Sequence record: OQ828465.1
Strand: one strand, 5' to 3'
Length of the DNA stretch: 64,000 nt
Shown here: positions 1,758-56,092 of the stretch, in pieces
Numbering within the stretch: the first letter of the stretch is position 1
How the letters are laid out: the number at the start of each line of letters is the position of its first letter
Program-made: the position numbers and the translations under genes
The notes under the pieces: generated by a model
What the model was told of the DNA's origin: nothing
What the model saw: the letters and a program-made list of their open reading frames with translations, nothing else
Databases searched by the model: none

Positions 1758-10530
<8,773 letters not shown>

Positions 10531-15273: not shown

Positions 15274-16065
15274 ATGTTTAAATCCTTGAACTTTAACTAC
15301 ACCACTCAACCTTCTACTGAAGGTATCTGTTTGTATATCGGTCATGGCGATATTGGACTACTTGAGGGTAATAAATTTTCAACTGATATTACTAAGAAAT
15401 TAGAACAATGTCCTTATTACCTACATGTTACTGTTGGTGAATCAAATACAGCTAACCAATTGACCATTACTGGTTATACTAATAACCAACCTAACATCCG
15501 TAGTTGGCATGGTCAAGAAGCTATGGACATTCTGCTGAATAATATCAACAGCAATAACAATGTGGTGCAACGAGAACTTAACTTTGAAGTACTCATTGAA
15601 TCAGTTGAACGTAAAGACCCGCGCGTTATTATACTAATGGCGCTAGGTGCACTTCCATCTCAAGATTACCCTGGTCATTTTAATGATTTAGCATCCGATA
15701 AGCAACTATTCAAACGAGAAGGCTCTTTCATTGATTATAATGAAAAAGAATATAGTGATACATACAATACCATTACACGCAAATTATTTAACCTGTGTGG
15801 CTGTGGTCATCCAGAAGCAGAGTTGCGTTATATTGATGACGTATTGGATATATATCGCCAAGGTTGGAATACTTCTAAACGTAATGAATGTGATAAGAAA
15901 TATGGATTTGGTCCGACTACATTCATGCTACATTATCTAGATAGTCTTGGATTTGCCGAGCATGGTACAGGCGCGGCCGGTTGGCTGCTCGATGAAGGTG
16001 CATGGGTTAATGTATTAGTAAAATTGGCAATTAAGGAAACCGAGGGTGGATGCACTGATGTTTAA
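15274..16065 (+). CDS. Hypothetical protein with CGCGxP and EHG-x5-WL motifs
   Basis: 263-aa ORF with GAGG SD. Confidence 0.75.
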   Translation: MFKSLNFNYTTQPSTEGICLYIGHGDIGLLEGNKFSTDITKKLEQCPYYLHVTVGESNTANQLTITGYTNNQPNIRSWHGQEAMDILLNNINSNNNVVQRELNFEVLIESVERKDPRVIILMALGALPSQDYPGHFNDLASDKQLFKREGSFIDYNEKEYSDTYNTITRKLFNLCGCGHPEAELRYIDDVLDIYRQGWNTSKRNECDKKYGFGPTTFMLHYLDSLGFAEHGTGAAGWLLDEGAWVNVLVKLAIKETEGGCTDV

Positions 16066-16783
16066 ATTATCGATGCGTGTATTTTGTGCGGTATTTCTGA
16101 TTAGTATCGGCATGTGTACTAAAGCTAGTGTTAATTACGAACCACTTGCTTTTTATGGTGTACCACTATTCTACTCTAATCATACTCCGCGAATTGCTCC
16201 ATGTAACTTCGACCAACAATCTGGACTTGGTAGTTGCGGATGGACTAGTTATCCAGAATATTCAGTTATTCCATTAGTTAAACCAAGTGATCCAACTAAA
16301 CAGATTCTTGTTAATTATTCGATGTATCAAGAAGTCATCTGTAATGATGAACAATGCTTTACTTCTGATTATCATGAGCCGTATGGTTTACTTTCAGGAT
16401 TTAAAGGCACCACATATTGGTCTGTGCCAACTGGTTATTATCTACTAAATGGACCCAATGGTGTACATGGTGTTAAGTTTGGTAACGGACCATTAAAAGA
16501 TAATTATCCTATTCGTGATATTTACATGATAAATAATGATAGAGATATTGATGGCGAATACCTCTCTCTAAAAAATACTAAGGGAATTTATAATGTGATG
16601 TGTAGTCCATTGACCCAGATGTGTAAATATTTGGGTAAAGAGTACACTCTATTGGAACTAAACCAATTGATTCCTTTTGTAAAGACTACCATTTGTGATG
16701 AATACCTTTGTTACATCGATAATAGTAAAGGCAAGGTTGCAGGCATAAATCCAAAACGAAAGGATATTTATGAGGGGTTATAA
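16058..16783 (+). CDS. Putative exported cysteine-rich protein (start probably 16058)
   Basis: Signal-peptide-like N-terminus; several C-x3-5-C pairs. Confidence 0.65.
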   Translation: MFKLSMRVFCAVFLISIGMCTKASVNYEPLAFYGVPLFYSNHTPRIAPCNFDQQSGLGSCGWTSYPEYSVIPLVKPSDPTKQILVNYSMYQEVICNDEQCFTSDYHEPYGLLSGFKGTTYWSVPTGYYLLNGPNGVHGVKFGNGPLKDNYPIRDIYMINNDRDIDGEYLSLKNTKGIYNVMCSPLTQMCKYLGKEYTLLELNQLIPFVKTTICDEYLCYIDNSKGKVAGINPKRKDIYEGL

Positions 16784-39964: not shown

Positions 39965-40333
39965 GTGATGCAATGTTTAACACACGTAATGAAGTTAGTG
40001 GCCGTATTAAGTACGTTGTTATACGTATCAAACCCACTAGCTGCATCGTTGGTAGTTGACGAGAATTACTGTAATGGTGTTGCACTTATAGCACATGCCA
40101 CAGCAGAAGCACGTCAGCGTAAAACACCCATTTTACAATGGGAAGAAAACCTACGATCCCTAAAAGGGTACGGCGTGAAGAACAAAGATAACGTTCTTTA
40201 CAATGTTCTCCCAGCAGCAATTAAAGAGGTGCACGTTGTGTATTCACGTAGACAAAGCCCACGTGATGCATACGTTACATCATTTAAAACCTGTATGGAT
40301 AACAACTACGGTAAAGCTGTGGTTGTAAAATAA
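39965..40333 (+). CDS. Exported two-cysteine helical protein (dispersed member of the 52.8-55.7 kb family)
   Basis: Signal-like N-terminus; Cys36 and Cys110. Confidence 0.7.
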   Translation: MMQCLTHVMKLVAVLSTLLYVSNPLAASLVVDENYCNGVALIAHATAEARQRKTPILQWEENLRSLKGYGVKNKDNVLYNVLPAAIKEVHVVYSRRQSPRDAYVTSFKTCMDNNYGKAVVVK

Positions 40334-40335
40334 AT

Positions 40336-40360
40336 ACCAGCCCTTCGGGGCTGGTTTATT
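40336..40360 (+). terminator. Intrinsic terminator (UUCG loop)
   Basis: ACCAGCCC-TTCG-GGGCTGGT-TTATT. Confidence 0.9.
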
Positions 40361-40368
40361 TCATCTAG

Positions 40369-40686
40369 ATGAGAATCTGTGGGTTGCAAATGTATAAAGT
40401 ATTTGTTATATCAATGATAACACTAACGGCTATATCAACATGTGTAACTTTCATTATTAATATAAAAAATCATTATATTCACTGGATGGGTGTTTATAAG
40501 GTTAGATATGTATTAGATAAAATGCCCAATGGCATAAGTTATTTTTTCTATCAAAATGCTGTCCAAGACATTATAGATAAAGAATCATCTAAAATAACAA
40601 ATCAACATATTTTTACATCTTTTATTTACGATATCAACTCATTGATTATATTAAAATGTAATAATAGGGAAACAGCAAATGAATGA
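40369..40686 (+). CDS. Membrane-anchored hypothetical protein (start may be 40390)
   Basis: Hydrophobic VFVISMITLTAISTCVTFII. Confidence 0.55.
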   Translation: MRICGLQMYKVFVISMITLTAISTCVTFIINIKNHYIHWMGVYKVRYVLDKMPNGISYFFYQNAVQDIIDKESSKITNQHIFTSFIYDINSLIILKCNNRETANE

Positions 40687-40969
40687 TATCATGACAGTAA
40701 TTATAGGTATTTTGTTTCTGATTATAATGATGGCTTTAATTAACTGGGGTTATTATGCCATCAAACACACGATAAAGTGTAACAGGCTTTATAAAGAAGC
40801 ACTATCAATTATTGACAATATGAGTGATGGTTTATCTGAATACCAGTATACAGTAGCTATTGGACGTTTACGTAAAAAGGCATACTCTATCGACCATTTA
40901 ACTGCTGTTAAAATGTTTGAAGCATTAGACTTAGTTATTAAAGATAAGTCAAGAAAGAAAAATAAATAA
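40679..40969 (+). CDS. Membrane-anchored hypothetical protein
   Basis: N-terminal TM helix VIIGILFLIIMMALINWGYY. Confidence 0.7.
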   Translation: MNDIMTVIIGILFLIIMMALINWGYYAIKHTIKCNRLYKEALSIIDNMSDGLSEYQYTVAIGRLRKKAYSIDHLTAVKMFEALDLVIKDKSRKKNK

Positions 40970-40977
40970 GCATAAAT

Positions 40978-41003
40978 AGGAGAGCTATTTAGCTCTCCTT
41001 TAT
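40978..41003 (+). terminator. Intrinsic terminator
   Basis: AGGAGAGCT-ATTT-AGCTCTCCT-TTAT. Confidence 0.85.
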
Positions 41004-41026
41004 TGCATTAAATTTTTTTTGAAATC

Positions 41027-41034
41027 TATATTAC
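41027..41034 (+). promoter_or_regulatory. phiKZ-type early promoter
   Basis: TATATTAC in the context CATTAAA-T-tract-GAAATC-TATATTACA, shared with 56140. Confidence 0.85.
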
Positions 41035-41070
41035 ATATTTGGTCAAGTCATATCAAAATAGGTAGTTATA

Positions 41071-41244
41071 ATGCTAGCATTACATTCACTACTATTATTA
41101 GTTATAGTGATTTGTTATATAATTCATAAGTGGTTGTGGTATACTTTCAATATGTTTAAACTAAAAGACATTATTAAAAATAAAGACAATTTAACTAATG
41201 ATGAACTATTAAAATTACTCATTGATAAAATAAAGGCAACCTAA
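41071..41244 (+). CDS. Small membrane protein, 57 aa (MLALHSLLLLVIVICYIIHKWLW...), absent from the ORF track
   Basis: AGGT SD; first gene after an early promoter; TAATG-coupled to the next gene. Confidence 0.65.
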   Translation: MLALHSLLLLVIVICYIIHKWLWYTFNMFKLKDIIKNKDNLTNDELLKLLIDKIKAT

Positions 41245-41733: not shown

Positions 41734-42642
41734 ATGCTAAAGGTAAAATCATTACTTACTGGCCATATTCTTCGAGCTACCTATGATTGGTTTCTTGAGA
41801 ATAACTTCAGAGATATTCTAATTGTAGCACATACTCAATTAGTACCTGATTTATCTGAGGTAGCTCTAAAGCATGCGAAAGAAGATCACACTATCACTTT
41901 CAATATCCATCCACGCTGTGCAAAGAATTTTTATATCAGTGACGAATATATCTCTTTCAATGTAACAGTAAATGGAGTTGGGGTCAGTATTAAACTTCCT
42001 CTTTATGCAGTATTGGGTGTAGTTACACCTATTGATGATAATTCTAACGCATTCTTTGAAATGCCGCTAGTGGATAGATATCTCAATGCAGATACTATTC
42101 GTGCAACATTAGAAGGAACTGTTAATAATGTAGTTGACAAAAACCCAGTATTAACTACCGTAGGTAATGTCACTGAGGTTAATTTTAAAAATAAAGCCGA
42201 TACCACTAATGGTAAGTTAGTTGTAAGGAATACATCTGAGAATGAGCATGATCAGATGATTGAAAGCGCCATTAACAGAGTAACTGAATTTAGTAATCCA
42301 GAATTAGATGCACATATTAGAGTAGCGGTAACTGCAATTAAACAGAATGCACCAGAATTAATTATGGATTGGTGTGAGCGGGTTATTAATTGTACACGTA
42401 ATGAAAACTATCAGGATAACATCAATGTACTTATGATGGAACTCCTCAGTTACCCTATTTCAAATGTGGTTAGTGAATCAACTGTGGACTCGGGTGATAA
42501 TACATCTAATTCATTTGACAATGATGTAAATAAGATGGTTGAGGATTTCAATAATTCTTCCAATTCGCAGATTATTATTAATAAACCTTCTCGTCCTACT
42601 GGTCCACCAAAACTCACTGTTATTAAAGGTGGTAAGAAATGA
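41734..42642 (+). CDS. sspB: SspB-like ClpXP protease adaptor with a long insertion
   Basis: ILRATYDWFLEN, ITFNIHP, ISFN and LPLYAVLGV align to the SspB core; C-terminal PKLTVIK resembles the ClpX-binding tail. Confidence 0.75.
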   Translation: MLKVKSLLTGHILRATYDWFLENNFRDILIVAHTQLVPDLSEVALKHAKEDHTITFNIHPRCAKNFYISDEYISFNVTVNGVGVSIKLPLYAVLGVVTPIDDNSNAFFEMPLVDRYLNADTIRATLEGTVNNVVDKNPVLTTVGNVTEVNFKNKADTTNGKLVVRNTSENEHDQMIESAINRVTEFSNPELDAHIRVAVTAIKQNAPELIMDWCERVINCTRNENYQDNINVLMMELLSYPISNVVSESTVDSGDNTSNSFDNDVNKMVEDFNNSSNSQIIINKPSRPTGPPKLTVIKGGKK

Positions 42643-42896
42643 ATGCAACTTTAGCAATTCTTTTTAGTAGTATCAGTATCGCTGGTTATCAAGCCAATGG
42701 TGCATCGCAGTCAACCACTGAGTTCTCTGACATGACTACTTGTTTTAGCGCGATTGAGCGTATTCAAAAACTAGCTAAAGCAAGTGCTATTCGTAATAAT
42801 GTAGAGACTGTAAAAATCAGCGATGGTGTTCTATTACGTTATTTTTCTTCTAGTACCAGTAAAGTAGAACATACTCTAATCTGTGTAAATAAATAG
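42639..42896 (+). CDS. Putative exported small protein
   Basis: Hydrophobic N-terminus; two Cys. Confidence 0.65.
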   Translation: MNATLAILFSSISIAGYQANGASQSTTEFSDMTTCFSAIERIQKLAKASAIRNNVETVKISDGVLLRYFSSSTSKVEHTLICVNK

Positions 42897-51741: not shown

Positions 51742-52398
51742 ATGCTAATGAATGAAATTATCGATATTCTAGAAGGAGGGAAAGAGAATATTCTCTTAAC
51801 TAACCATCTAGGTAATGGCAAATATTCCAATGCGGGTAATGCAATGGCTGCATCATATGCCATTGCGGCACATACTGCTGTTGGTCAATTGCGAGATGGT
51901 TCAGGAAAACCTTACTGGCATCATTTATTACAAGTAGCTGAGATGGCGCAATTATTCGACCTATCTCACGCTGCTTATAAAGCAGCATGGTTACATGATG
52001 TAATTGAGGATACTGCTGTAACTGCTTCTGATCTAACTAAACTATTCTCAATCCCTGTTGTTAATTTAGTAACTGAACTAACAAATGTAACTTACGAAGG
52101 TAATCGTAAAACTAGGATTAGTTTACAACATGAAAGACTTTCTCGCATTTCATGGAGTGGTCAATCTCTTAAGTTACTAGATTCCATTTCAAACATGTGG
52201 TCGATTGTTAATGATAAGCCTGATTTTGCTGAACTGTATCTGACTGAGAAAGCTCAACTAATCAGTAAGTTAAATAATTGTCACCCCGCTATTAAAGATC
52301 TGGCTATATCTGTTCTCTATGGCAGGTGTACTATGGTTGGTGGGGATGCACTAAAAGAATATAATAAACTATTTTCTGATAATGAAATTGTATGTTAA
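51742..52398 (+). CDS. HD-domain hydrolase, RelA/SpoT hydrolase (Mesh1/SAH)-like
   Basis: AHTAVGQLRDGSGKPYWHHLLQVA, AAWLHDVIEDT and LKLLDSISN motifs. Confidence 0.85.
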   Translation: MLMNEIIDILEGGKENILLTNHLGNGKYSNAGNAMAASYAIAAHTAVGQLRDGSGKPYWHHLLQVAEMAQLFDLSHAAYKAAWLHDVIEDTAVTASDLTKLFSIPVVNLVTELTNVTYEGNRKTRISLQHERLSRISWSGQSLKLLDSISNMWSIVNDKPDFAELYLTEKAQLISKLNNCHPAIKDLAISVLYGRCTMVGGDALKEYNKLFSDNEIVC

Positions 52399-52416: not shown

Positions 52417-52439
52417 ACCCTCCCTTCGGGGAGGGTTTT
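52417..52439 (+). terminator. Intrinsic terminator (UUCG loop)
   Basis: ACCCTCCC-TTCG-GGGAGGGT-TTT. Confidence 0.9.
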
Positions 52440-52475: not shown

Positions 52476-52483
52476 TATATTAC
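52476..52483 (+). promoter_or_regulatory. phiKZ-type early promoter driving the exported-protein array
   Basis: TATATTAC after a terminator. Confidence 0.85.
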
Positions 52484-52516
52484 AAATATGAATTTAATAA
52501 CCAAGAGGGCAATACA

Positions 52517-52780
52517 ATGACTGAACGTTTGAAATCCGTATGGTGCGCTTGCAGCTTACTGCGTGAACGCTGGAGACACATCCAAGACATTGCTGTCGGG
52601 GATGAACATCATGTCATAGTAAAAAACGATATGCTGATGGTGTTTCGTGGTCAAGTACCGGTAGGTAGCATGTACCGGGGTGACAGTGACCCACTCATCT
52701 ACGAGGGTGGTGCACTGGAAGAATTTACTAAAGTTGTATTGGATTTAGAATTCAATACTCGTGGTGAAACCAATAGTTAA
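52517..52780 (+). CDS. Hypothetical early protein
   Basis: 87-aa ORF with GAGGG SD. Confidence 0.75.
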   Translation: MTERLKSVWCACSLLRERWRHIQDIAVGDEHHVIVKNDMLMVFRGQVPVGSMYRGDSDPLIYEGGALEEFTKVVLDLEFNTRGETNS

Positions 52781-52806
52781 TAAAATTAATTTTGAGGTAA
52801 TTCATT

Positions 52807-53214
52807 ATGAAATATGTAATTGTATTTATGTTGTCTATTGTAACTATCACTGCTAACTCGGCTGTCATGTACACTAATCGTGATTCATGCATCGAGTTTG
52901 TAAAACAGGCAGATGAATTGTTTGTAAAAGGTGCATCTGTAACTGAAGTGCAAATGAAGACTTATGAAAGGATTCATTATATCCTTAATAACACTAAAGA
53001 TCTAAAGACCAACCAGTCTAAAGTTGAAGAACTCACTGGTCTATTTTACCTATGGTCTAAGGTAGATAAAATGGCAATTGAGGCAAGTTTGCCACGTGCA
53101 ACAAATGCTGCTAAAGTCTATAAGACCACTCCTGAGAAATTCATCATTGATGGTTATTTCCAGCGTTGTGTAGCGGCAGGTGCGTTTGAAGCAAAACCAC
53201 TTACTCTAAAATAA
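52807..53214 (+). CDS. Exported two-cysteine helical protein (family member)
   Basis: Signal peptide MKYVIVFMLSIVTITANS-A; Cys28 and Cys121. Confidence 0.8.
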   Translation: MKYVIVFMLSIVTITANSAVMYTNRDSCIEFVKQADELFVKGASVTEVQMKTYERIHYILNNTKDLKTNQSKVEELTGLFYLWSKVDKMAIEASLPRATNAAKVYKTTPEKFIIDGYFQRCVAAGAFEAKPLTLK

Positions 53215-53226
53215 TGGAGGTACAAC

Positions 53227-53586
53227 ATGCTTAAGAATTGGCTATTATTCCTTTTCCTGCCAATCCTGTCCATTGCATGTCAGCCTGCCCACGCTGTAGA
53301 AGTGGGTATTACTAAGAAATCATGTAATGTGGCAGTAAATCTTTCACAAAAAGCAACTGAGCTTTATGATAAGAACCTATCCCAATTTGAGATAATGATG
53401 CAGTTAGATATGATCTCTCGTAAGGATATGGATGACTTAGAGTTCTATGCAGGTACCGTATATGCTAAATTAAACTTAGTTGATATTCGCGTAAATAAAC
53501 GAAAAGGATTTACCAATGGAGCTATTCTAGATAGGCTAGCTGAAAACTGTGTTGAAGCAATTGGTACTAAATTTAACTTGGAGTAG
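53227..53586 (+). CDS. Exported two-cysteine helical protein (family member)
   Basis: Signal peptide ending AHA; Cys33 and Cys108. Confidence 0.8.
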   Translation: MLKNWLLFLFLPILSIACQPAHAVEVGITKKSCNVAVNLSQKATELYDKNLSQFEIMMQLDMISRKDMDDLEFYAGTVYAKLNLVDIRVNKRKGFTNGAILDRLAENCVEAIGTKFNLE

Positions 53587-53589
53587 AAT

Positions 53590-54384
53590 ATGGTTAGTAT
53601 TTATATTGTCATTATACTCATGGCTATGCTAGCTGCATTGACATGTGGTAATTTGGTAGATAGCTGGGTAAGGCCAGCTATTCTAAAGTGGTTAAATGAT
53701 GATGTCGCTATTCATTTCACCAATGCTACCTGGATGGTTGGGGGGATCCCTAATAGTGTTCCAATGCAACTAGGTAAAGCTGTTTGGTTACCCAAATACG
53801 TGGGTGACGGAATACGTCTTTATATCACGGCTGATGAAATAAAATTTGGATGGAATGGTAAAGAAAAAGATGCTTTAGCACGAGCCATTGTTGAAGTTAT
53901 CTTTATTGGTAAAAATCCAAATAGTAAACTTCTTGAAGTAAGTATTAAACCTATTTGGTTACACCCTTCTATCCAAAAAGAAAGTTTCTATTTAATGTTT
54001 GATTGGGAAAAGCTTTATACAAAAAATGAAGAGATGCGTATTTGTTGGAAGACAATACGTCACACTTTTTTCTATGGATTCCTAGGTTTGCTATTTGGCG
54101 GTAGTGCCAATGCAGATAACCTTGTATTAACTGAACGTGGATGTGACCAATATGAAGCAATGGTGAGAACTATTGCATCTAAAGCTTATATTGGATTAGA
54201 TCCAGTTATGGGTAGGGAATTCATTATTAATGATCCTGATATGTTAAATGCCCGTGAGAAAGCACAACGTAATACCCGTATCATTATCGATATGGTGGAA
54301 ACTGGACAAGAACCCAAAGACATTGCATTATGGATGAATACTCAATGTAAACAAGAAGCAGTGTCAAATTTAATCAAACAGTGA
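53590..54384 (+). CDS. Membrane-anchored protein fused to a C-terminal copy of the two-cysteine domain
   Basis: N-terminal TM; internal signal-like segment FFYGFLGLLFGGSANA; Cys185 and Cys253. Confidence 0.7.
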   Translation: MVSIYIVIILMAMLAALTCGNLVDSWVRPAILKWLNDDVAIHFTNATWMVGGIPNSVPMQLGKAVWLPKYVGDGIRLYITADEIKFGWNGKEKDALARAIVEVIFIGKNPNSKLLEVSIKPIWLHPSIQKESFYLMFDWEKLYTKNEEMRICWKTIRHTFFYGFLGLLFGGSANADNLVLTERGCDQYEAMVRTIASKAYIGLDPVMGREFIINDPDMLNAREKAQRNTRIIIDMVETGQEPKDIALWMNTQCKQEAVSNLIKQ

Positions 54385-54397
54385 AAAAGGCATAGAT

Positions 54398-54781
54398 ATG
54401 AAAAGAAATTTTGAAGATGATCACGTGGTAATGGCAGTGGAAGTATATGAGAAACTGAAAGAAGCTGCTGCTTATTCATTACACTCTTCTGAAATTAGTA
54501 AGATCGAACGACATATGCGTAAGTTTAATCGTGTTCAACGCGATAAACATATTGAAAATATGCGTATGGAAATGCTTGAGAAACGCGAGGCTATTAGAAA
54601 AGCAAAATCTTTCTTTTCTCAAAATGCCGGTAAAATTGGTTGCGTAGTAGATAGGCTTGTCAAAGTATGTGAAGTGTATAAAATGGATAAGTCTATGGTG
54701 GTTGTTGAGTTTCTCCAACATAAATCTAAAATTAAAGTTCCAGTAAATCCTGAAAAAATTACTATTCTTACCATTAAATAA
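54398..54781 (+). CDS. Hypothetical basic protein (paralog of 29431..30033)
   Basis: 127-aa ORF; alignable N-terminal 80 aa. Confidence 0.8.
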   Translation: MKRNFEDDHVVMAVEVYEKLKEAAAYSLHSSEISKIERHMRKFNRVQRDKHIENMRMEMLEKREAIRKAKSFFSQNAGKIGCVVDRLVKVCEVYKMDKSMVVVEFLQHKSKIKVPVNPEKITILTIK

Positions 54782-54798
54782 ATGAAGAAGGATTTAAA

Positions 54799-55254
54799 AT
54801 GAAAAATGTAATTGCAGCAGCTTTCGCTGGTCTCATTGCCATTACCGGTATCATGTTCAATACCGCAATGGCTGAAATCAAGATTGGTAAAAAAGATGCT
54901 CAACTCACTGTGCAGTCGTGTGCAATGGTTGAAACCATTACTAAACAAGCTGTATTTCGAATGAGTGAAGGTCATAGCGCAGATGAAGTTGGTGTGCTTA
55001 TGCTCAACAACTCTGCTAAACTCAAAGATGAGTTGGATACCAATAATTGGATTGCGTTAACATTCGTATTCAATAGTCTTAATAAAATCAATAATGACCT
55101 TAACAGTAAAGAGATCCATGATTATATCCGTAGTCAAGGTTACAATGTGACTACTCCTAATCTGGCAGCTTTTATCAGCGGGTATTATGGCAATTACTGC
55201 ATGAAGCATATTGGTGAGAAATTCACTCACATGGTAATTGTTGAACTCATTTAA
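54799..55254 (+). CDS. Exported two-cysteine helical protein (family member)
   Basis: Signal peptide ending AMA; Cys41 and Cys134. Confidence 0.8.
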   Translation: MKNVIAAAFAGLIAITGIMFNTAMAEIKIGKKDAQLTVQSCAMVETITKQAVFRMSEGHSADEVGVLMLNNSAKLKDELDTNNWIALTFVFNSLNKINNDLNSKEIHDYIRSQGYNVTTPNLAAFISGYYGNYCMKHIGEKFTHMVIVELI

Positions 55255-55286
55255 TTCATATCGAATACTTTCAAAAGGAAAATAGG

Positions 55287-55664
55287 ATGAAATACGTCTT
55301 CTCGCTCATTATCACTATGGTAGCAATGTCGGTTAATGCACAACCCGTAACCGTGTCATCTTGCTACGTGCTGCACAGCTTGGCAAAGAATATGGTTCAA
55401 TTCTACACTAATGGCGGTGAGCCATTGGAGATGTATGCAATACTGCAAGATGAACTATCCATTGCCATAGATAAAAACCAGAGTGATAAGGCACTCGCTA
55501 TTAATATCGCATTGGATAATGTCGATGTAATATACCAAAATCTCACTGATCCCGCACTTAAGCTTTTGGCAAAGAGCGAGGGAAGTGATCTTGGTGAGAT
55601 GCTGACTGAAAAACTCAGTAATGGGTGTTTCAATATAGTCGGCGAGGAGTTGTATGATAACTAG
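55287..55664 (+). CDS. Exported two-cysteine helical protein (family member)
   Basis: Signal peptide ending VNA; Cys26 and Cys114. Confidence 0.8.
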   Translation: MKYVFSLIITMVAMSVNAQPVTVSSCYVLHSLAKNMVQFYTNGGEPLEMYAILQDELSIAIDKNQSDKALAINIALDNVDVIYQNLTDPALKLLAKSEGSDLGEMLTEKLSNGCFNIVGEELYDN

Positions 55665-55893
55665 AATCATCCTAATTGTTGCATGGGTATGGGTAATCTC
55701 TCTTATGGGAATGATTACGTATGTTCTTTATGATACGTATCAATTTCGTAAGAAATTAGAAATGCCTGTTGTAGAATGGGAAGATAAGGCGAAGGACACT
55801 CCTGTTAAGAAGTGTCCAGATGAAGTATTATTCGCTGAAGACCCAAAGGATGGCAAACTCAAAATGGGATGCCCTGAGAGTTATAAGAAATAA
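55654..55893 (+). CDS. Single-pass membrane protein
   Basis: TM IILIVAWVWVISLMGMITYVLY; two C-terminal Cys; GAGGAG SD. Confidence 0.75.
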   Translation: MITRIILIVAWVWVISLMGMITYVLYDTYQFRKKLEMPVVEWEDKAKDTPVKKCPDEVLFAEDPKDGKLKMGCPESYKK

Positions 55894-55895
55894 TT

Positions 55896-55919
55896 AGAGG
55901 ACCTTCGGGTCCTCTTTTT
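55896..55919 (+). terminator. Intrinsic terminator (UUCG loop)
   Basis: AGAGGACC-TTCG-GGTCCTCT-TTTT. Confidence 0.9.
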
Positions 55920-55975: not shown

Positions 55976-56083
55976 ATGCAACTTAGTAATGAACTTTTCT
56001 ATGTGGGTATGGTAGCTGTATCAATGTCAATCGGTATGCTATTTAGCTATATTTACCACACTCATAAGAAAAAATATAAATAA
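55976..56083 (+). CDS. Small membrane protein, 35 aa ([35 protein letters not shown]), absent from the ORF track
   Basis: GAGGA SD; one TM helix and a basic tail; lies between two terminators. Confidence 0.65.
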
Positions 56084-56092
56084 AGTCATAAA

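What the first reader, a model, noticed from the sequence alone, without database searches (positions are those of the whole stretch)
52476..55893. Early operon encoding a tandem array of diverged, exported two-cysteine helical proteins (candidate undescribed periplasmic system)
Seen: after the early promoter at 52476, ORFs 52807, 53227, 54799 and 55287, and the C-terminal half of 53590, each have a Sec-type signal ending A-x-A/S and exactly two Cys in the mature part (28/121, 33/108, 41/134, 26/114, 185/253). They share an N-motif T-x-x-(S/G)-C followed by an amphipathic helix, and a C-motif C-x-x-x-x-G (CVEAIGTKF, CMKHIGEKF, CFNIVGEEL). A sixth copy lies at 39965 (36/110). The operon ends with a TM protein bearing two Cys. 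The high sequence divergence on a conserved scaffold suggests diversifying selection. Inference: periplasmic, disulfide-closed helical bundles resembling in size and layout T6SS amidase immunity proteins (Tai4/Rap1a) or HdeA. They are candidate inhibitors of peptidoglycan hydrolases (superinfection exclusion of incoming tail lysins such as gp181, or protection of the infected cell from T6SS attack) or of periplasmic anti-phage sensors.
Basis: partly seen in the sequence, partly recalled or inferred. Interest (0 to 1): 0.8.

Follow-up and report, generated by a model that had tools for sequence, protein, structure and literature searches.

The report
Early exported disulfide-stapled helical proteins
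Phage phiKZ carries an early-promoter operon encoding several small helical proteins, each apparently closed by one disulfide bond, that are sent to the bacterial periplasm or outer membrane; they are real and undescribed, but their function, most plausibly blocking further phage entry, is still a guess.

Summary
The window is Pseudomonas phage phiKZ or a near-identical isolate. The ORFs are gp246.1 to gp253, plus gp229 at 39968.

**Confirmed:** The eight genes sit tightly packed between a terminator followed by a TATATTAC early-promoter-like motif and a terminator hairpin.

**Corrected:**
- gp248 is a lipoprotein, not a Sec A-x-A protein. The lipobox Cys is kept in 14 of 17 relatives.
- The gp249 copy is a periplasmic C-terminal domain of a two-TM protein.
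- Only gp248, gp251 and gp252 are demonstrably one sequence family.
- gp249C and gp229 are linked by predicted fold only. gp247 is unresolved.

**Fold:** the gp248 model (pLDDT 87.5) has five helices plus a small N/C strand pair. The two Cys are the only invariant columns in 20 relatives. The nearest solved fold is saposin, weakly (TM 0.62-0.70). No Tai4, Rap1a, HdeA or Spackle appears in the 50 listed PDB fold matches.

**Selection:** orthologues evolve under purifying selection (dN/dS 0.03-0.16), not diversifying selection.

**Distribution:** the family is tiny (18 clusters among 1.84 billion proteins) and was found only in Pseudomonas phages, at 2 to 6 copies per genome.

**Function:** unknown. 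The best guess is early envelope-level exclusion, analogous to T4 Spackle or T5 Llp.

The parts
52417..52436 (+). Intrinsic terminator hairpin ending the upstream gp245-gp246 unit
   Evidence: 8-bp GC-rich stem followed by a T-run
52476..52483 (+). TATATTAC core of an early-promoter-like motif with a T-rich tract upstream
   Evidence: Eight of the ten + strand copies in the window, this one included, have this context: after a terminator, T-rich upstream, intergenic. It fits published descriptions of phiKZ early promoters (PMC8244752, PMC7598289). No mapped transcription start site table could be read.
52517..52780 (+). gp246.1, 87 aa, no export signal, function unknown
   Evidence: ORF and annotation. 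No gene is called at this position in the diverged relative L006.
52807..53214 (+). gp247, 135 aa: signal peptide (cleavage about ANS|A) plus a helical two-Cys domain (C28, C121). Membership of the core family is unresolved.
   Evidence: Orthologue-like PS119XW gp302 shares 19 invariant columns (hhalign P=1e-4). The model has pLDDT 65.8 and five helices. It gave no fold match to the gp248 family.
53227..53586 (+). gp248, 119 aa: lipoprotein signal (lipobox LSIA|C18) plus a five-helix domain with C33 and C108. The most widely conserved member.
   Evidence: Lipobox Cys in 14 of 17 relatives, and C33/C108 are the only invariant columns. UniRef names it 'Lipoprotein'. Model pLDDT 87.5. The identical Churi gp059 was detected at 15 min post infection (PMC11849849).
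53590..54384 (+). gp249, 264 aa: N-terminal TM segment, about 125-aa middle domain, second hydrophobic segment (aa 159-175, nt 54064-54114), and a C-terminal two-Cys domain (aa 176-264, nt 54115-54381; C185, C253)
   Evidence: The charge distribution places the C-domain in the periplasm and the middle domain in the cytoplasm (inference from the positive-inside rule). A 264-aa BFVD entry matches the gp248 model at TMq 0.68, prob 1.00.
54398..54781 (+). gp250, 127 aa, no export signal, function unknown
   Evidence: It is the fastest-evolving gene of the operon (59% identity, dN/dS 0.24).
54799..55254 (+). gp251, 151 aa: signal peptide (AMA|E) plus a two-Cys helical domain (C41, C134). Paralogue of gp248.
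   Evidence: hhalign s248 vs s251: prob 81%, P=1e-5 over the full length. It hits the gp248 PHROG at E=0.002 without its signal peptide. A 151-aa BFVD entry matches at TMq 0.71.
55287..55664 (+). gp252, 125 aa: signal peptide (VNA|Q) plus an acidic two-Cys helical domain (C26, C114). Paralogue of gp251 and gp248.
   Evidence: hhalign s251 vs s252: P=7e-4 over 102 columns. T, S, C, A, C and G are invariant in A3. It scored E=3e-23 with the A3 family profile, which includes gp252 itself. pI 4.2.
55654..55893 (+). gp253, 79 aa: N-terminal TM segment with C54 and C73. It overlaps gp252 by 11 nt.
   Evidence: It is 96% identical in relative L006.
55896..55915 (+). Terminator-like hairpin closing the unit
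   Evidence: GC-rich hairpin followed by a T-run, read directly in the sequence. The scan listed it on the minus strand.
39968..40333 (+). gp229 (PHIKZ229), 121 aa: signal peptide (LAA|S) plus a basic two-Cys domain. A distant copy in another transcription unit, followed by a terminator at 40336-40355.
   Evidence: Orthologues occur in phiPA3, Phabio, 201phi2-1 and PS119XW. A 121-aa PS119XW BFVD entry matches the gp248 model at TMq 0.73. The mature part hits phrog_2315 at E=2e-4.

Best explanation
This is one transcription unit of phiKZ that carries an early-type promoter (core 52476-52483, terminator hairpin 55896-55915).

Among its eight products, four stand-alone proteins (gp247, gp248, gp251, gp252) and the C-terminal domain of gp249 leave the cytoplasm. 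gp247, gp251 and gp252 use cleavable Sec-type signals. gp248 is a lipoprotein, probably tethered to the inner leaflet of the outer membrane. The gp249 domain sits behind an internal membrane segment.

Each exported unit is a 90-125-residue bundle of about five helices. One Cys lies at the start of the first helix and one at the end of the last helix. They most likely form a disulfide that ties the two ends together.

gp248, gp251 and gp252 are true paralogues. gp249C and the distant gp229 share the predicted fold. gp247 has the same layout, but its kinship is unproven.

Inferred function: the proteins reach the envelope within minutes of infection and bind envelope components or parts of incoming phages. 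This would make the infected cell refractory to further phage entry, as do the small, early, disulfide-stapled T4 Spackle (periplasmic) and T5 Llp (outer-membrane lipoprotein). The differently charged paralogues would have different targets.

The anatomy and location rest on tool results (my confidence about 0.8). The exclusion function is inference by analogy (about 0.3).
For: Operon:
- Terminator, promoter-like motif, tight gene spacing and a closing hairpin.

Early expression:
- The promoter motif class matches published descriptions.
- Churi gp059, 100% identical to gp248, was found by proteomics at 15 min post infection.

Export:
- Signal-like N-termini are kept in all orthologues despite 20-40% identity.
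- The lipobox Cys is present in 14 of 17 gp248-type proteins.

Disulfide:
- The two Cys are the only invariant columns in 20 sequences.
- In the model, N-terminal strand 2-4 pairs with C-terminal strand 92-94. This puts C10 and C85 in register.

Fold and family:
- The gp248 model has pLDDT 87.5 and pTM 0.78.
- BFVD matches: phiPA3 gp303, a 125-aa Psa21 protein and a 113-aa 201phi2-1 protein (TMq 0.79-0.89). Also entries with the lengths of gp251 (0.71) and gp249 (0.68), and of the PS119XW gp229 orthologue (0.73).
- Profile comparisons: gp248 vs gp251 P=1e-5, gp251 vs gp252 P=7e-4.

Functional constraint:
- dN/dS is 0.03-0.16 where it could be estimated (gp251 dS saturated), and the whole operon is syntenic in a diverged relative.

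Analogy:
- T4 Spackle is early and periplasmic. Its 75-aa mature form is a helical bundle with a Cys29-Cys81 disulfide (PMC7677548).
- T5 Llp is an early-expressed outer-membrane lipoprotein with a Cys11-Cys58 disulphide that binds the periplasmic face of its receptor (PMC9586334).

Distinct surfaces:
- Mature pI ranges from 4.2 to 9.4.
Against: - There is no sequence or listed fold match to Spackle or Llp, so the functional link is analogy only.
- No interaction partner was tested.
- SignalP and LipoP were not available. Export calls rest on a heuristic and on conservation.
- The transcription start site at 52476 was not confirmed from a published table.
- gp247, gp229 and gp249C are not significantly similar to the core by profile comparison.
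- The gp247 model is of low confidence and matched only itself.
- The identities of the nameless BFVD entries are inferred from length and organism only.
- Homologues were found only in Pseudomonas phages. This fits a host-envelope target at least as well as a phage-tail target.
Confidence: 0.4

Rival explanations
1. Saposin-like lipid handlers. The domains are periplasmic, disulfide-stapled, saposin-type helical leaves. They would bind phospholipid, LPS or lipoprotein acyl chains and remodel or stabilise the envelope during the long jumbo-phage cycle, rather than block phage entry.
For: - The only solved structures with meaningful TM-scores are saposins. Human saposin A gives TMq 0.62, TMt 0.70, rmsd 2.8-2.9 over 81 columns, prob 0.82-0.92. 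Saposin C, Na-SLP-1 and the prophytepsin saposin insert also appear.
- Like saposins, the first and last helices carry the stapling Cys.
- One member is itself membrane-tethered.
- The A2 profile gave two prosaposin chains among its 19 weak PDB hits.
Against: - Foldseek E-values are 0.76 or worse.
- The prosaposin sequence hits have E of 0.5-0.7 and vanish with the larger A7 profile.
- There is one disulfide, not the three that define saposin-like proteins.
- There is no Pfam SapB hit.
- Small five-helix bundles often match saposins by chance.
Confidence: 0.2
2. Inhibitors of host periplasmic enzymes, envelope sensors or competitors' weapons. They would protect the infected cell rather than exclude phages.
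For: - They are periplasmic, small, helical and disulfide-stapled, as are some immunity proteins (general knowledge).
- Homologues are restricted to Pseudomonas phages, which suggests a host-genus-specific target.
- Several paralogues have different charge.
Against: - No Tai4, Rap1a or HdeA appears in the 50 listed fold matches, and Pfam, NCBIfam and PADLOC gave no hit.
- There are no cellular homologues among 1.84 billion representatives.
- Sensors that act at phage entry would fire before early genes are expressed (inference).
Confidence: 0.12
3. Not one family. Apart from the gp248/gp251/gp252 trio, the 'copies' (gp247, gp229, gp249C) would be unrelated small secreted proteins. They would share a generic layout (signal, helices, one stabilising disulfide) by convergence, with unrelated functions.
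For: - Profile comparisons of these three groups with the core, and with one another, are at null level. P is 0.02-0.9, similar to reversed-sequence controls.
- The gp247 model found no family member.
- gp229 belongs to a different, wider PHROG, phrog_2315.
- gp229 lies in another transcription unit.
Against: - BFVD entries matching gp249 and the PS119XW gp229 orthologue in length and organism align to the gp248 model at TMq 0.68-0.73, prob 0.97-1.00.
- The gp247-like PS119XW gp302 sits in tandem with gp248-like and gp251-like genes.
- The signal-plus-two-Cys layout is otherwise absent from the window's ORFs.
Confidence: 0.15
4. Lysis-timing components: periplasmic antiholin-like sensors, as T4 RI is.
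For: They are small, early and periplasmic. Membrane proteins lie in the same unit (gp249, gp253), with gp253.1 just downstream.
Against: The phiKZ lysis cassette is elsewhere (gp141-gp144). Its holin is described as having its large soluble domain in the cytoplasm (PMC12894885). That leaves little for a periplasmic antiholin to bind.
Confidence: 0.05

Closest known systems
T4 Spackle (Sp), periplasmic inhibitor of the gp5 tail lysozyme
   Same: Early gene; cleaved export signal; small mature helical bundle of about five helices; one disulfide between the first helix and a C-terminal helix (Cys29-Cys81) (PMC7677548).
   Different: There is no sequence similarity (PHROGs and PDB profile searches). 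It is not among the 50 listed PDB fold matches. Spackle is a single gene of 75 mature residues. Here there are up to six members of 89-126 residues, one lipidated and one fused to a membrane protein. The target is unknown.
T5 Llp / Cor small exclusion lipoproteins
   Same: Like gp248, these are small phage lipoproteins facing the periplasm, with an intramolecular disulphide near the two ends (Llp Cys11-Cys58); exclusion proteins of this kind are expressed early in infection (PMC9586334).
   Different: Llp is 61 residues. No homology or fold match was found here. Only gp248-type members are lipidated, and 3 of 17 of those are not. Any receptor-jamming role is untested.
Saposin-like proteins (SAPLIP fold)
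   Same: Closest solved fold (TM 0.62-0.70). It is a helical leaf whose first and last helices are tied by a disulfide.
   Different: There is one Cys pair instead of three. E-values are not significant, and there is no Pfam SapB match. An extra N/C strand pair is present in the model. Lipid binding is untested.
T6SS amidase immunity proteins Tai4/Rap1a and the chaperone HdeA
   Same: Small, periplasmic and helical.
   Different: They did not come back in any search: not in the 50 listed fold matches, and no Pfam, NCBIfam or PADLOC hit. No effector gene is adjacent.

Membership tests
gp248/gp251/gp252 family (PHROGs 15284, 22400, 26535; unnamed) | Significant profile-level sequence similarity over the whole mature domain | tested here: met
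   gp248 vs gp251: prob 81%, P=1e-5 over 94 columns. gp251 vs gp252: P=7e-4 over 102 columns. Mature gp251 hits phrog_15284 at E=0.002. The rep search with A3 (which contains gp248, gp251 and gp252) recovers all three. This is met for these three only. gp247, gp229 and gp249C are at null level.
gp248/gp251/gp252 family | Shared predicted fold | tested here: inconclusive
   BFVD entries with the lengths of gp251 and gp249, and of the PS119XW gp229 orthologue, match at TMq 0.68-0.73. Their identities could not be confirmed. The gp247 model is of low confidence and matched no member.
Bacterial-type lipoprotein (signal peptidase II substrate): gp248 | Lipobox with an invariant Cys after a hydrophobic segment | tested here: met
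   LSIA|C in gp248. The Cys has G, A or S at -1 in 13 of 17 gp248-type relatives, and a Cys is present in 14 of 17. UniRef labels it 'Lipoprotein'. LipoP and SignalP were not available.
T4 Spackle family | Sequence or fold homology to Spackle | tested here: not met
   No annotated PHROG hit. No PDB sequence hit. Not among the 50 listed Foldseek PDB matches.
T4 Spackle family | Binds and inhibits the phage's own tail lysozyme | not testable with these tools
   No complex prediction tool was at hand.
T5 Llp / Cor family | Homology to Llp or Cor, and binding to a TonB-dependent receptor | tested here: not met
   No hit in PHROGs, PDB sequence or fold searches. Receptor binding is not testable here.
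Saposin-like proteins | Saposin fold | tested here: inconclusive
   Saposin A gives TMq 0.62, TMt 0.70, prob 0.92, but E=0.76.
Saposin-like proteins | Six conserved Cys forming three disulfides, and a SapB Pfam signature | tested here: not met
   Only two conserved Cys. No Pfam hit.
Tai4/Rap1a immunity proteins; HdeA | Family HMM or fold match; for the immunity proteins, an adjacent effector gene | tested here: not met
   No Pfam, NCBIfam or PADLOC hit. They are absent from the listed fold matches. The neighbouring genes are phage hypotheticals.
phiKZ early transcription unit | Early promoter motif upstream, and product present early in infection | tested here: met
   The motif context is shared with seven other sites. 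Published descriptions agree. The identical gp248 protein was detected at 15 min in phage Churi. The mapped start site itself was not seen.

The most novel reading that the evidence does not exclude
The operon would be a phage-encoded envelope-reprogramming system specific to Pseudomonas nucleus-forming phages. It would comprise a set of saposin-like, lipid- or protein-binding periplasmic modules: soluble ones, one outer-membrane-tethered, and one (gp249) wired through the inner membrane to a conserved cytoplasmic domain. Events in the periplasm would then be coupled to the cytoplasmic phase of infection. This would be a kind of system not described for any phage.
Probability: 0.1. Interest if true: 0.8.

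Novelty: new variant of a known kind. Interest (0 to 1): 0.5.

Why it matters
phiKZ is the model nucleus-forming jumbo phage, and work on it has centred on the cytoplasm: the nucleus, the early vesicle and the RNA polymerases. No paper in the searched library describes gp247-gp253 or gp229.

This operon would commit up to six conserved, purifying-selected proteins to the periplasm and outer membrane, from an early-type promoter. If they act in exclusion, they would be the first such proteins for this phage group. That would bear on how phiKZ-type phages, including therapy candidates such as OMKO1, behave in mixed infections. If they are saposin-like lipid binders, that would be a new activity for phage proteins.

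Either way, the family gives a defined set of small, well-predicted targets for structural work.

Tried and rejected
Homologue and family searches with little or no yield:
- Word-index homologue searches found almost only near-identical proteins.
- Pfam, NCBIfam and PADLOC gave nothing.
- PDB sequence searches with A3, A2 and A7, and with the gp249 N-part and gp250, gave only noise.

Literature:
- Published start-site tables were not held.
- The 2014 phiKZ transcription paper was not held.

Checks that failed or overturned a lead:
- UniProt accessions from BFVD could not be fetched. The cluster look-up did not reveal them either.
- The gp247 structure came out at low confidence, and its fold search matched only itself.
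- Larger-profile hhalign did not link gp247, gp229 or gp249C to the core.
- A possible bridge through phrog_2315 was rejected. The phiPA3 gp303 hit disappeared once its signal peptide was removed. The gp229 hit stayed.
- An independent internal start for the gp249 C-domain was considered and judged unsupported. The purine-rich stretch abuts the ATG, and the fusion is conserved.
- Diversifying selection was rejected on dN/dS.
- An o-spanin role for gp248 was rejected, because the phiKZ spanins are gp141 and gp141.1.

Technical notes:
- Loci L003-L005 did not reach the script machine. Their proteins were taken from the alignment files instead.

Full report
**Identity of the window.** The 3.6 kb around the finding is 100% identical to several phiKZ-type isolates and 99.9-100% identical to phiKZ itself. 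In the RefSeq record the ORFs are gp246.1, gp247, gp248, gp249, gp250, gp251, gp252 and gp253, all unnamed. The ORF at 39965/39968 is PHIKZ229.

**Check of the observation.**
- Each mature part has exactly two Cys. One lies 8-16 residues after the predicted cleavage site and one lies 11-17 residues from the C-terminus.
- A simple signal-peptide heuristic flags ten + strand ORFs in the 64 kb. Six of them are the finding's proteins.
- Of 77 small + strand ORFs, eight have the two-Cys N/C layout. Five of those are the finding's stand-alone proteins. The pattern is therefore not chance.
- The N-motif T-x-x-(S/G)-C holds in four of six proteins. The C-motif C-x-x-x-x-G holds in three of six.

**Operon structure.**
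- A terminator hairpin (52417-52436) is followed by a T-rich tract and TATATTAC at 52476-52483. Seven other intergenic sites in the window have the same arrangement.
- This agrees with published descriptions of phiKZ early promoters: a conserved AT-rich element near -10 with a T-rich part upstream (PMC8244752, PMC7598289).
- The eight genes are separated by -11 to 32 nt. No + strand terminator was found inside the unit. A GC hairpin with a T-run follows gp253 at 55896-55915.
- I could not read a published start-site table.
- Independent support for early expression comes from phage Churi. Its gp059 is 100% identical to gp248 and was detected by proteomics at 15 min post infection.

**Corrections to the anatomy.**
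- gp248 has a third Cys (C18) in LSIAC. Its relatives in phiPA3, Phabio and PS119XW, and metagenomic relatives, carry a canonical lipobox at the same place. The Cys is present in 14 of 17 gp248-type sequences. UniRef labels the protein 'Lipoprotein'.
- gp248 is therefore a lipoprotein. With Q-P-A after the Cys it most likely goes to the outer membrane. This rests on my knowledge of Lol sorting and was not tested.
- The gp249 copy is the C-terminal domain of a 264-aa protein that is conserved as a fusion in a diverged relative.
- gp249 has an N-terminal hydrophobic segment, a middle domain of about 125 residues, a second hydrophobic segment preceded by basic residues and followed by acidic ones, and then the two-Cys domain. 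By the positive-inside rule the C-domain is periplasmic and the middle domain cytoplasmic (inference).
- A separate internal start is not supported. The purine-rich stretch abuts the ATG.

**Kinship.**
- Pairwise BLAST among the six is at noise level, except for gp251 vs gp252.
- gp248 has orthologues in 16 further Pseudomonas phage records at 25-39% identity. Subfamily alignments built from these relatives gave the following hhalign results:
  - gp248 vs gp251: 81% probability, P=1e-5, over the full length.
  - gp251 vs gp252: P=7e-4 over 102 columns.
  - gp247 vs PS119XW gp302: P=1e-4.
- The gp247 to PS119XW gp302 link is confirmed by 19 invariant columns.
- gp247, gp229 and gp249C are not significantly similar to the core or to each other, even with larger profiles. 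Reversed-sequence controls score alike.
- A full HMMER scan of 1.84 billion representatives with the core profile found only 18 clusters.
- In the 20-sequence alignment the only invariant columns are the two Cys.

**Fold of gp248.**
- The gp248 mature domain was modelled with seven sequences. It gave pLDDT 87.5 and pTM 0.78. The elements are strand 2-4, five helices (7-25, 30-38, 47-59, 61-69, 74-87) and strand 92-94.
- The two terminal strands pair. C10 and C85 are then in register for a disulfide.
- Against predicted viral structures, the model matched these entries:
  - phiPA3 gp303, a 125-aa Psa21 protein and a 113-aa 201phi2-1 protein, at TMq 0.79-0.89.
  - A 151-aa entry at 0.71 and a 264-aa entry at 0.68. 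These are the lengths of gp251 and gp249.
  - A 121-aa PS119XW entry at 0.73. This is the length of that phage's gp229 orthologue.
  - A 157-aa Phabio entry at 0.74.
  - More weakly, PS119XW gp302 at 0.50.
  - 'Lipoprotein' or 'exported protein' entries of other phages.
- I could not confirm the identity of the nameless entries.

**Fold of gp247.** The gp247 model is of low confidence (pLDDT 65.8). It has five helices, with the Cys at the start of the first and the end of the last. Its fold search found only itself.

**Comparison with solved structures.**
- The only matches with meaningful TM-scores are saposins. Saposin A gives TMq 0.62, TMt 0.70 and prob 0.92, but E=0.76.
- Tai4, Rap1a, HdeA, Spackle and Llp are not among the 50 listed matches.
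- Sequence profiles found nothing significant in the PDB.

**Distribution and evolution.**
- gp248 and gp229 have orthologues in all the Pseudomonas phiKZ-like genera that appeared: phiPA3, Phabio, PS119XW and HPP-Temi for both, Psa21 for gp248 and 201phi2-1 for gp229. gp247, gp249 and gp252 were found by tblastn only in phiKZ-type genomes.
- Around the gp248 orthologue, PS119XW has three tandem copies, Psa21 has two and phiPA3 has one.
- Every tblastn hit was in a Pseudomonas phage.
- A Logan contig from a 70-88% identical relative keeps gp247 to gp253 in the same order.
- dN/dS against that relative is 0.03 (gp248), 0.09 (gp247), 0.10 (gp249) and 0.16 (gp252). dS is saturated for gp251.
- This is purifying selection on each paralogue, not diversifying selection.
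- Mature pI ranges from 4.2 to 9.4. This suggests different partners.

**Function.** Nothing in the searched library describes these genes.

The closest known things in layout and timing are two phage exclusion proteins:
- T4 Spackle is early and periplasmic. Its 75-aa mature form is a helical bundle with a Cys29-Cys81 disulfide, and it inhibits the tail lysozyme (PMC7677548).
- T5 Llp is an early-expressed outer-membrane lipoprotein with a Cys11-Cys58 disulphide. It jams the receptor from the periplasmic side (PMC9586334).

I therefore rank early envelope-level exclusion first, at roughly 0.3. This is analogy, not homology. The rivals are:
- A saposin-like lipid-handling role.
- Inhibition of host enzymes, sensors or competitors' weapons.
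- The view that the outlying 'copies' are convergent.
- A lysis-timing role, which the known lysis cassette makes unlikely.

**Verdict.** The family is undescribed and small, and it lies in a heavily studied phage. Its mechanism is open.

Noticed in passing
window 53590-54114: gp249 has a conserved N-terminal hydrophobic segment and a middle domain of about 125 residues with no homologue in Pfam, PHROGs (other than its own family) or the PDB. By charge distribution it would be cytoplasmic, linked through the membrane to the periplasmic two-Cys domain.
   Followed up: partly
window 40369-41244 and 55977-56084: Runs of very small membrane proteins follow both loci. gp230, gp231 and a 57-aa ORF follow gp229. 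gp253 lies at the end of the operon and gp253.1 just after it. PS119XW (L004 3600-3872) and Psa21 (L005 3224-3502) have a multi-TM protein of about 90 aa just upstream of their gp248 orthologue.
   Followed up: no
window 42639-42896: An 85-aa ORF has a hydrophobic N-terminus (no basic residue), then two Cys at positions 35 and 82 in the same N/C layout. It may be a further, smaller exported two-Cys protein.
   Followed up: no
window 16058-16783 and 9901-10530: Two further + strand ORFs (241 aa with nine Cys after the signal-like part; 209 aa) have signal-like N-termini by the heuristic.
   Followed up: no
window 51742-52398: gp246, just upstream and in a separate unit, is annotated as a metal-dependent phosphohydrolase. 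Its orthologue on L006 carries Pfam HD_4 (PF13328). The gene next to the gp248 orthologue is conserved in phiPA3 and PS119XW.
   Followed up: partly
window 11650, 25498, 41027, 48970, 49402, 52476, 56140, 58825: A recurrent module of terminator hairpin, T-rich tract and TATATTAC marks probable early promoters across the window. Two sub-types of upstream context are visible.
   Followed up: partly
proteins P0003, P0008, P0009, P0012, P0016, P0017, P0041-P0049: Many fragments of these phiKZ proteins are deposited as 'hypothetical protein, partial [Klebsiella pneumoniae]' on contigs of 210-414 bases. This looks like phage carry-over or contamination in those assemblies.
   Followed up: no
phage record PP456878.1 (hit H82): In one isolate (KEN19) the gp252 orthologue matched in two pieces at 89% identity, so it may be disrupted there. 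All other 46 records match in one piece.
   Followed up: no
window 54398-54781: gp250 is the non-exported protein inside the array and the fastest-evolving gene of the operon (59% identity, dN/dS 0.24). Its first 80 residues match phrog_18482 (E=2.5e-13). Its match to the Phd/YefM antitoxin Pfam model is below threshold (E=0.076). Psa21 likewise has a non-exported gene between its two exported copies.
   Followed up: no
window 39968 versus 52400: The offset between window and NC_004629 coordinates differs by 317 bases between gp229 and the operon. The window therefore comes from an isolate with an indel relative to the reference somewhere in between.
   Followed up: no
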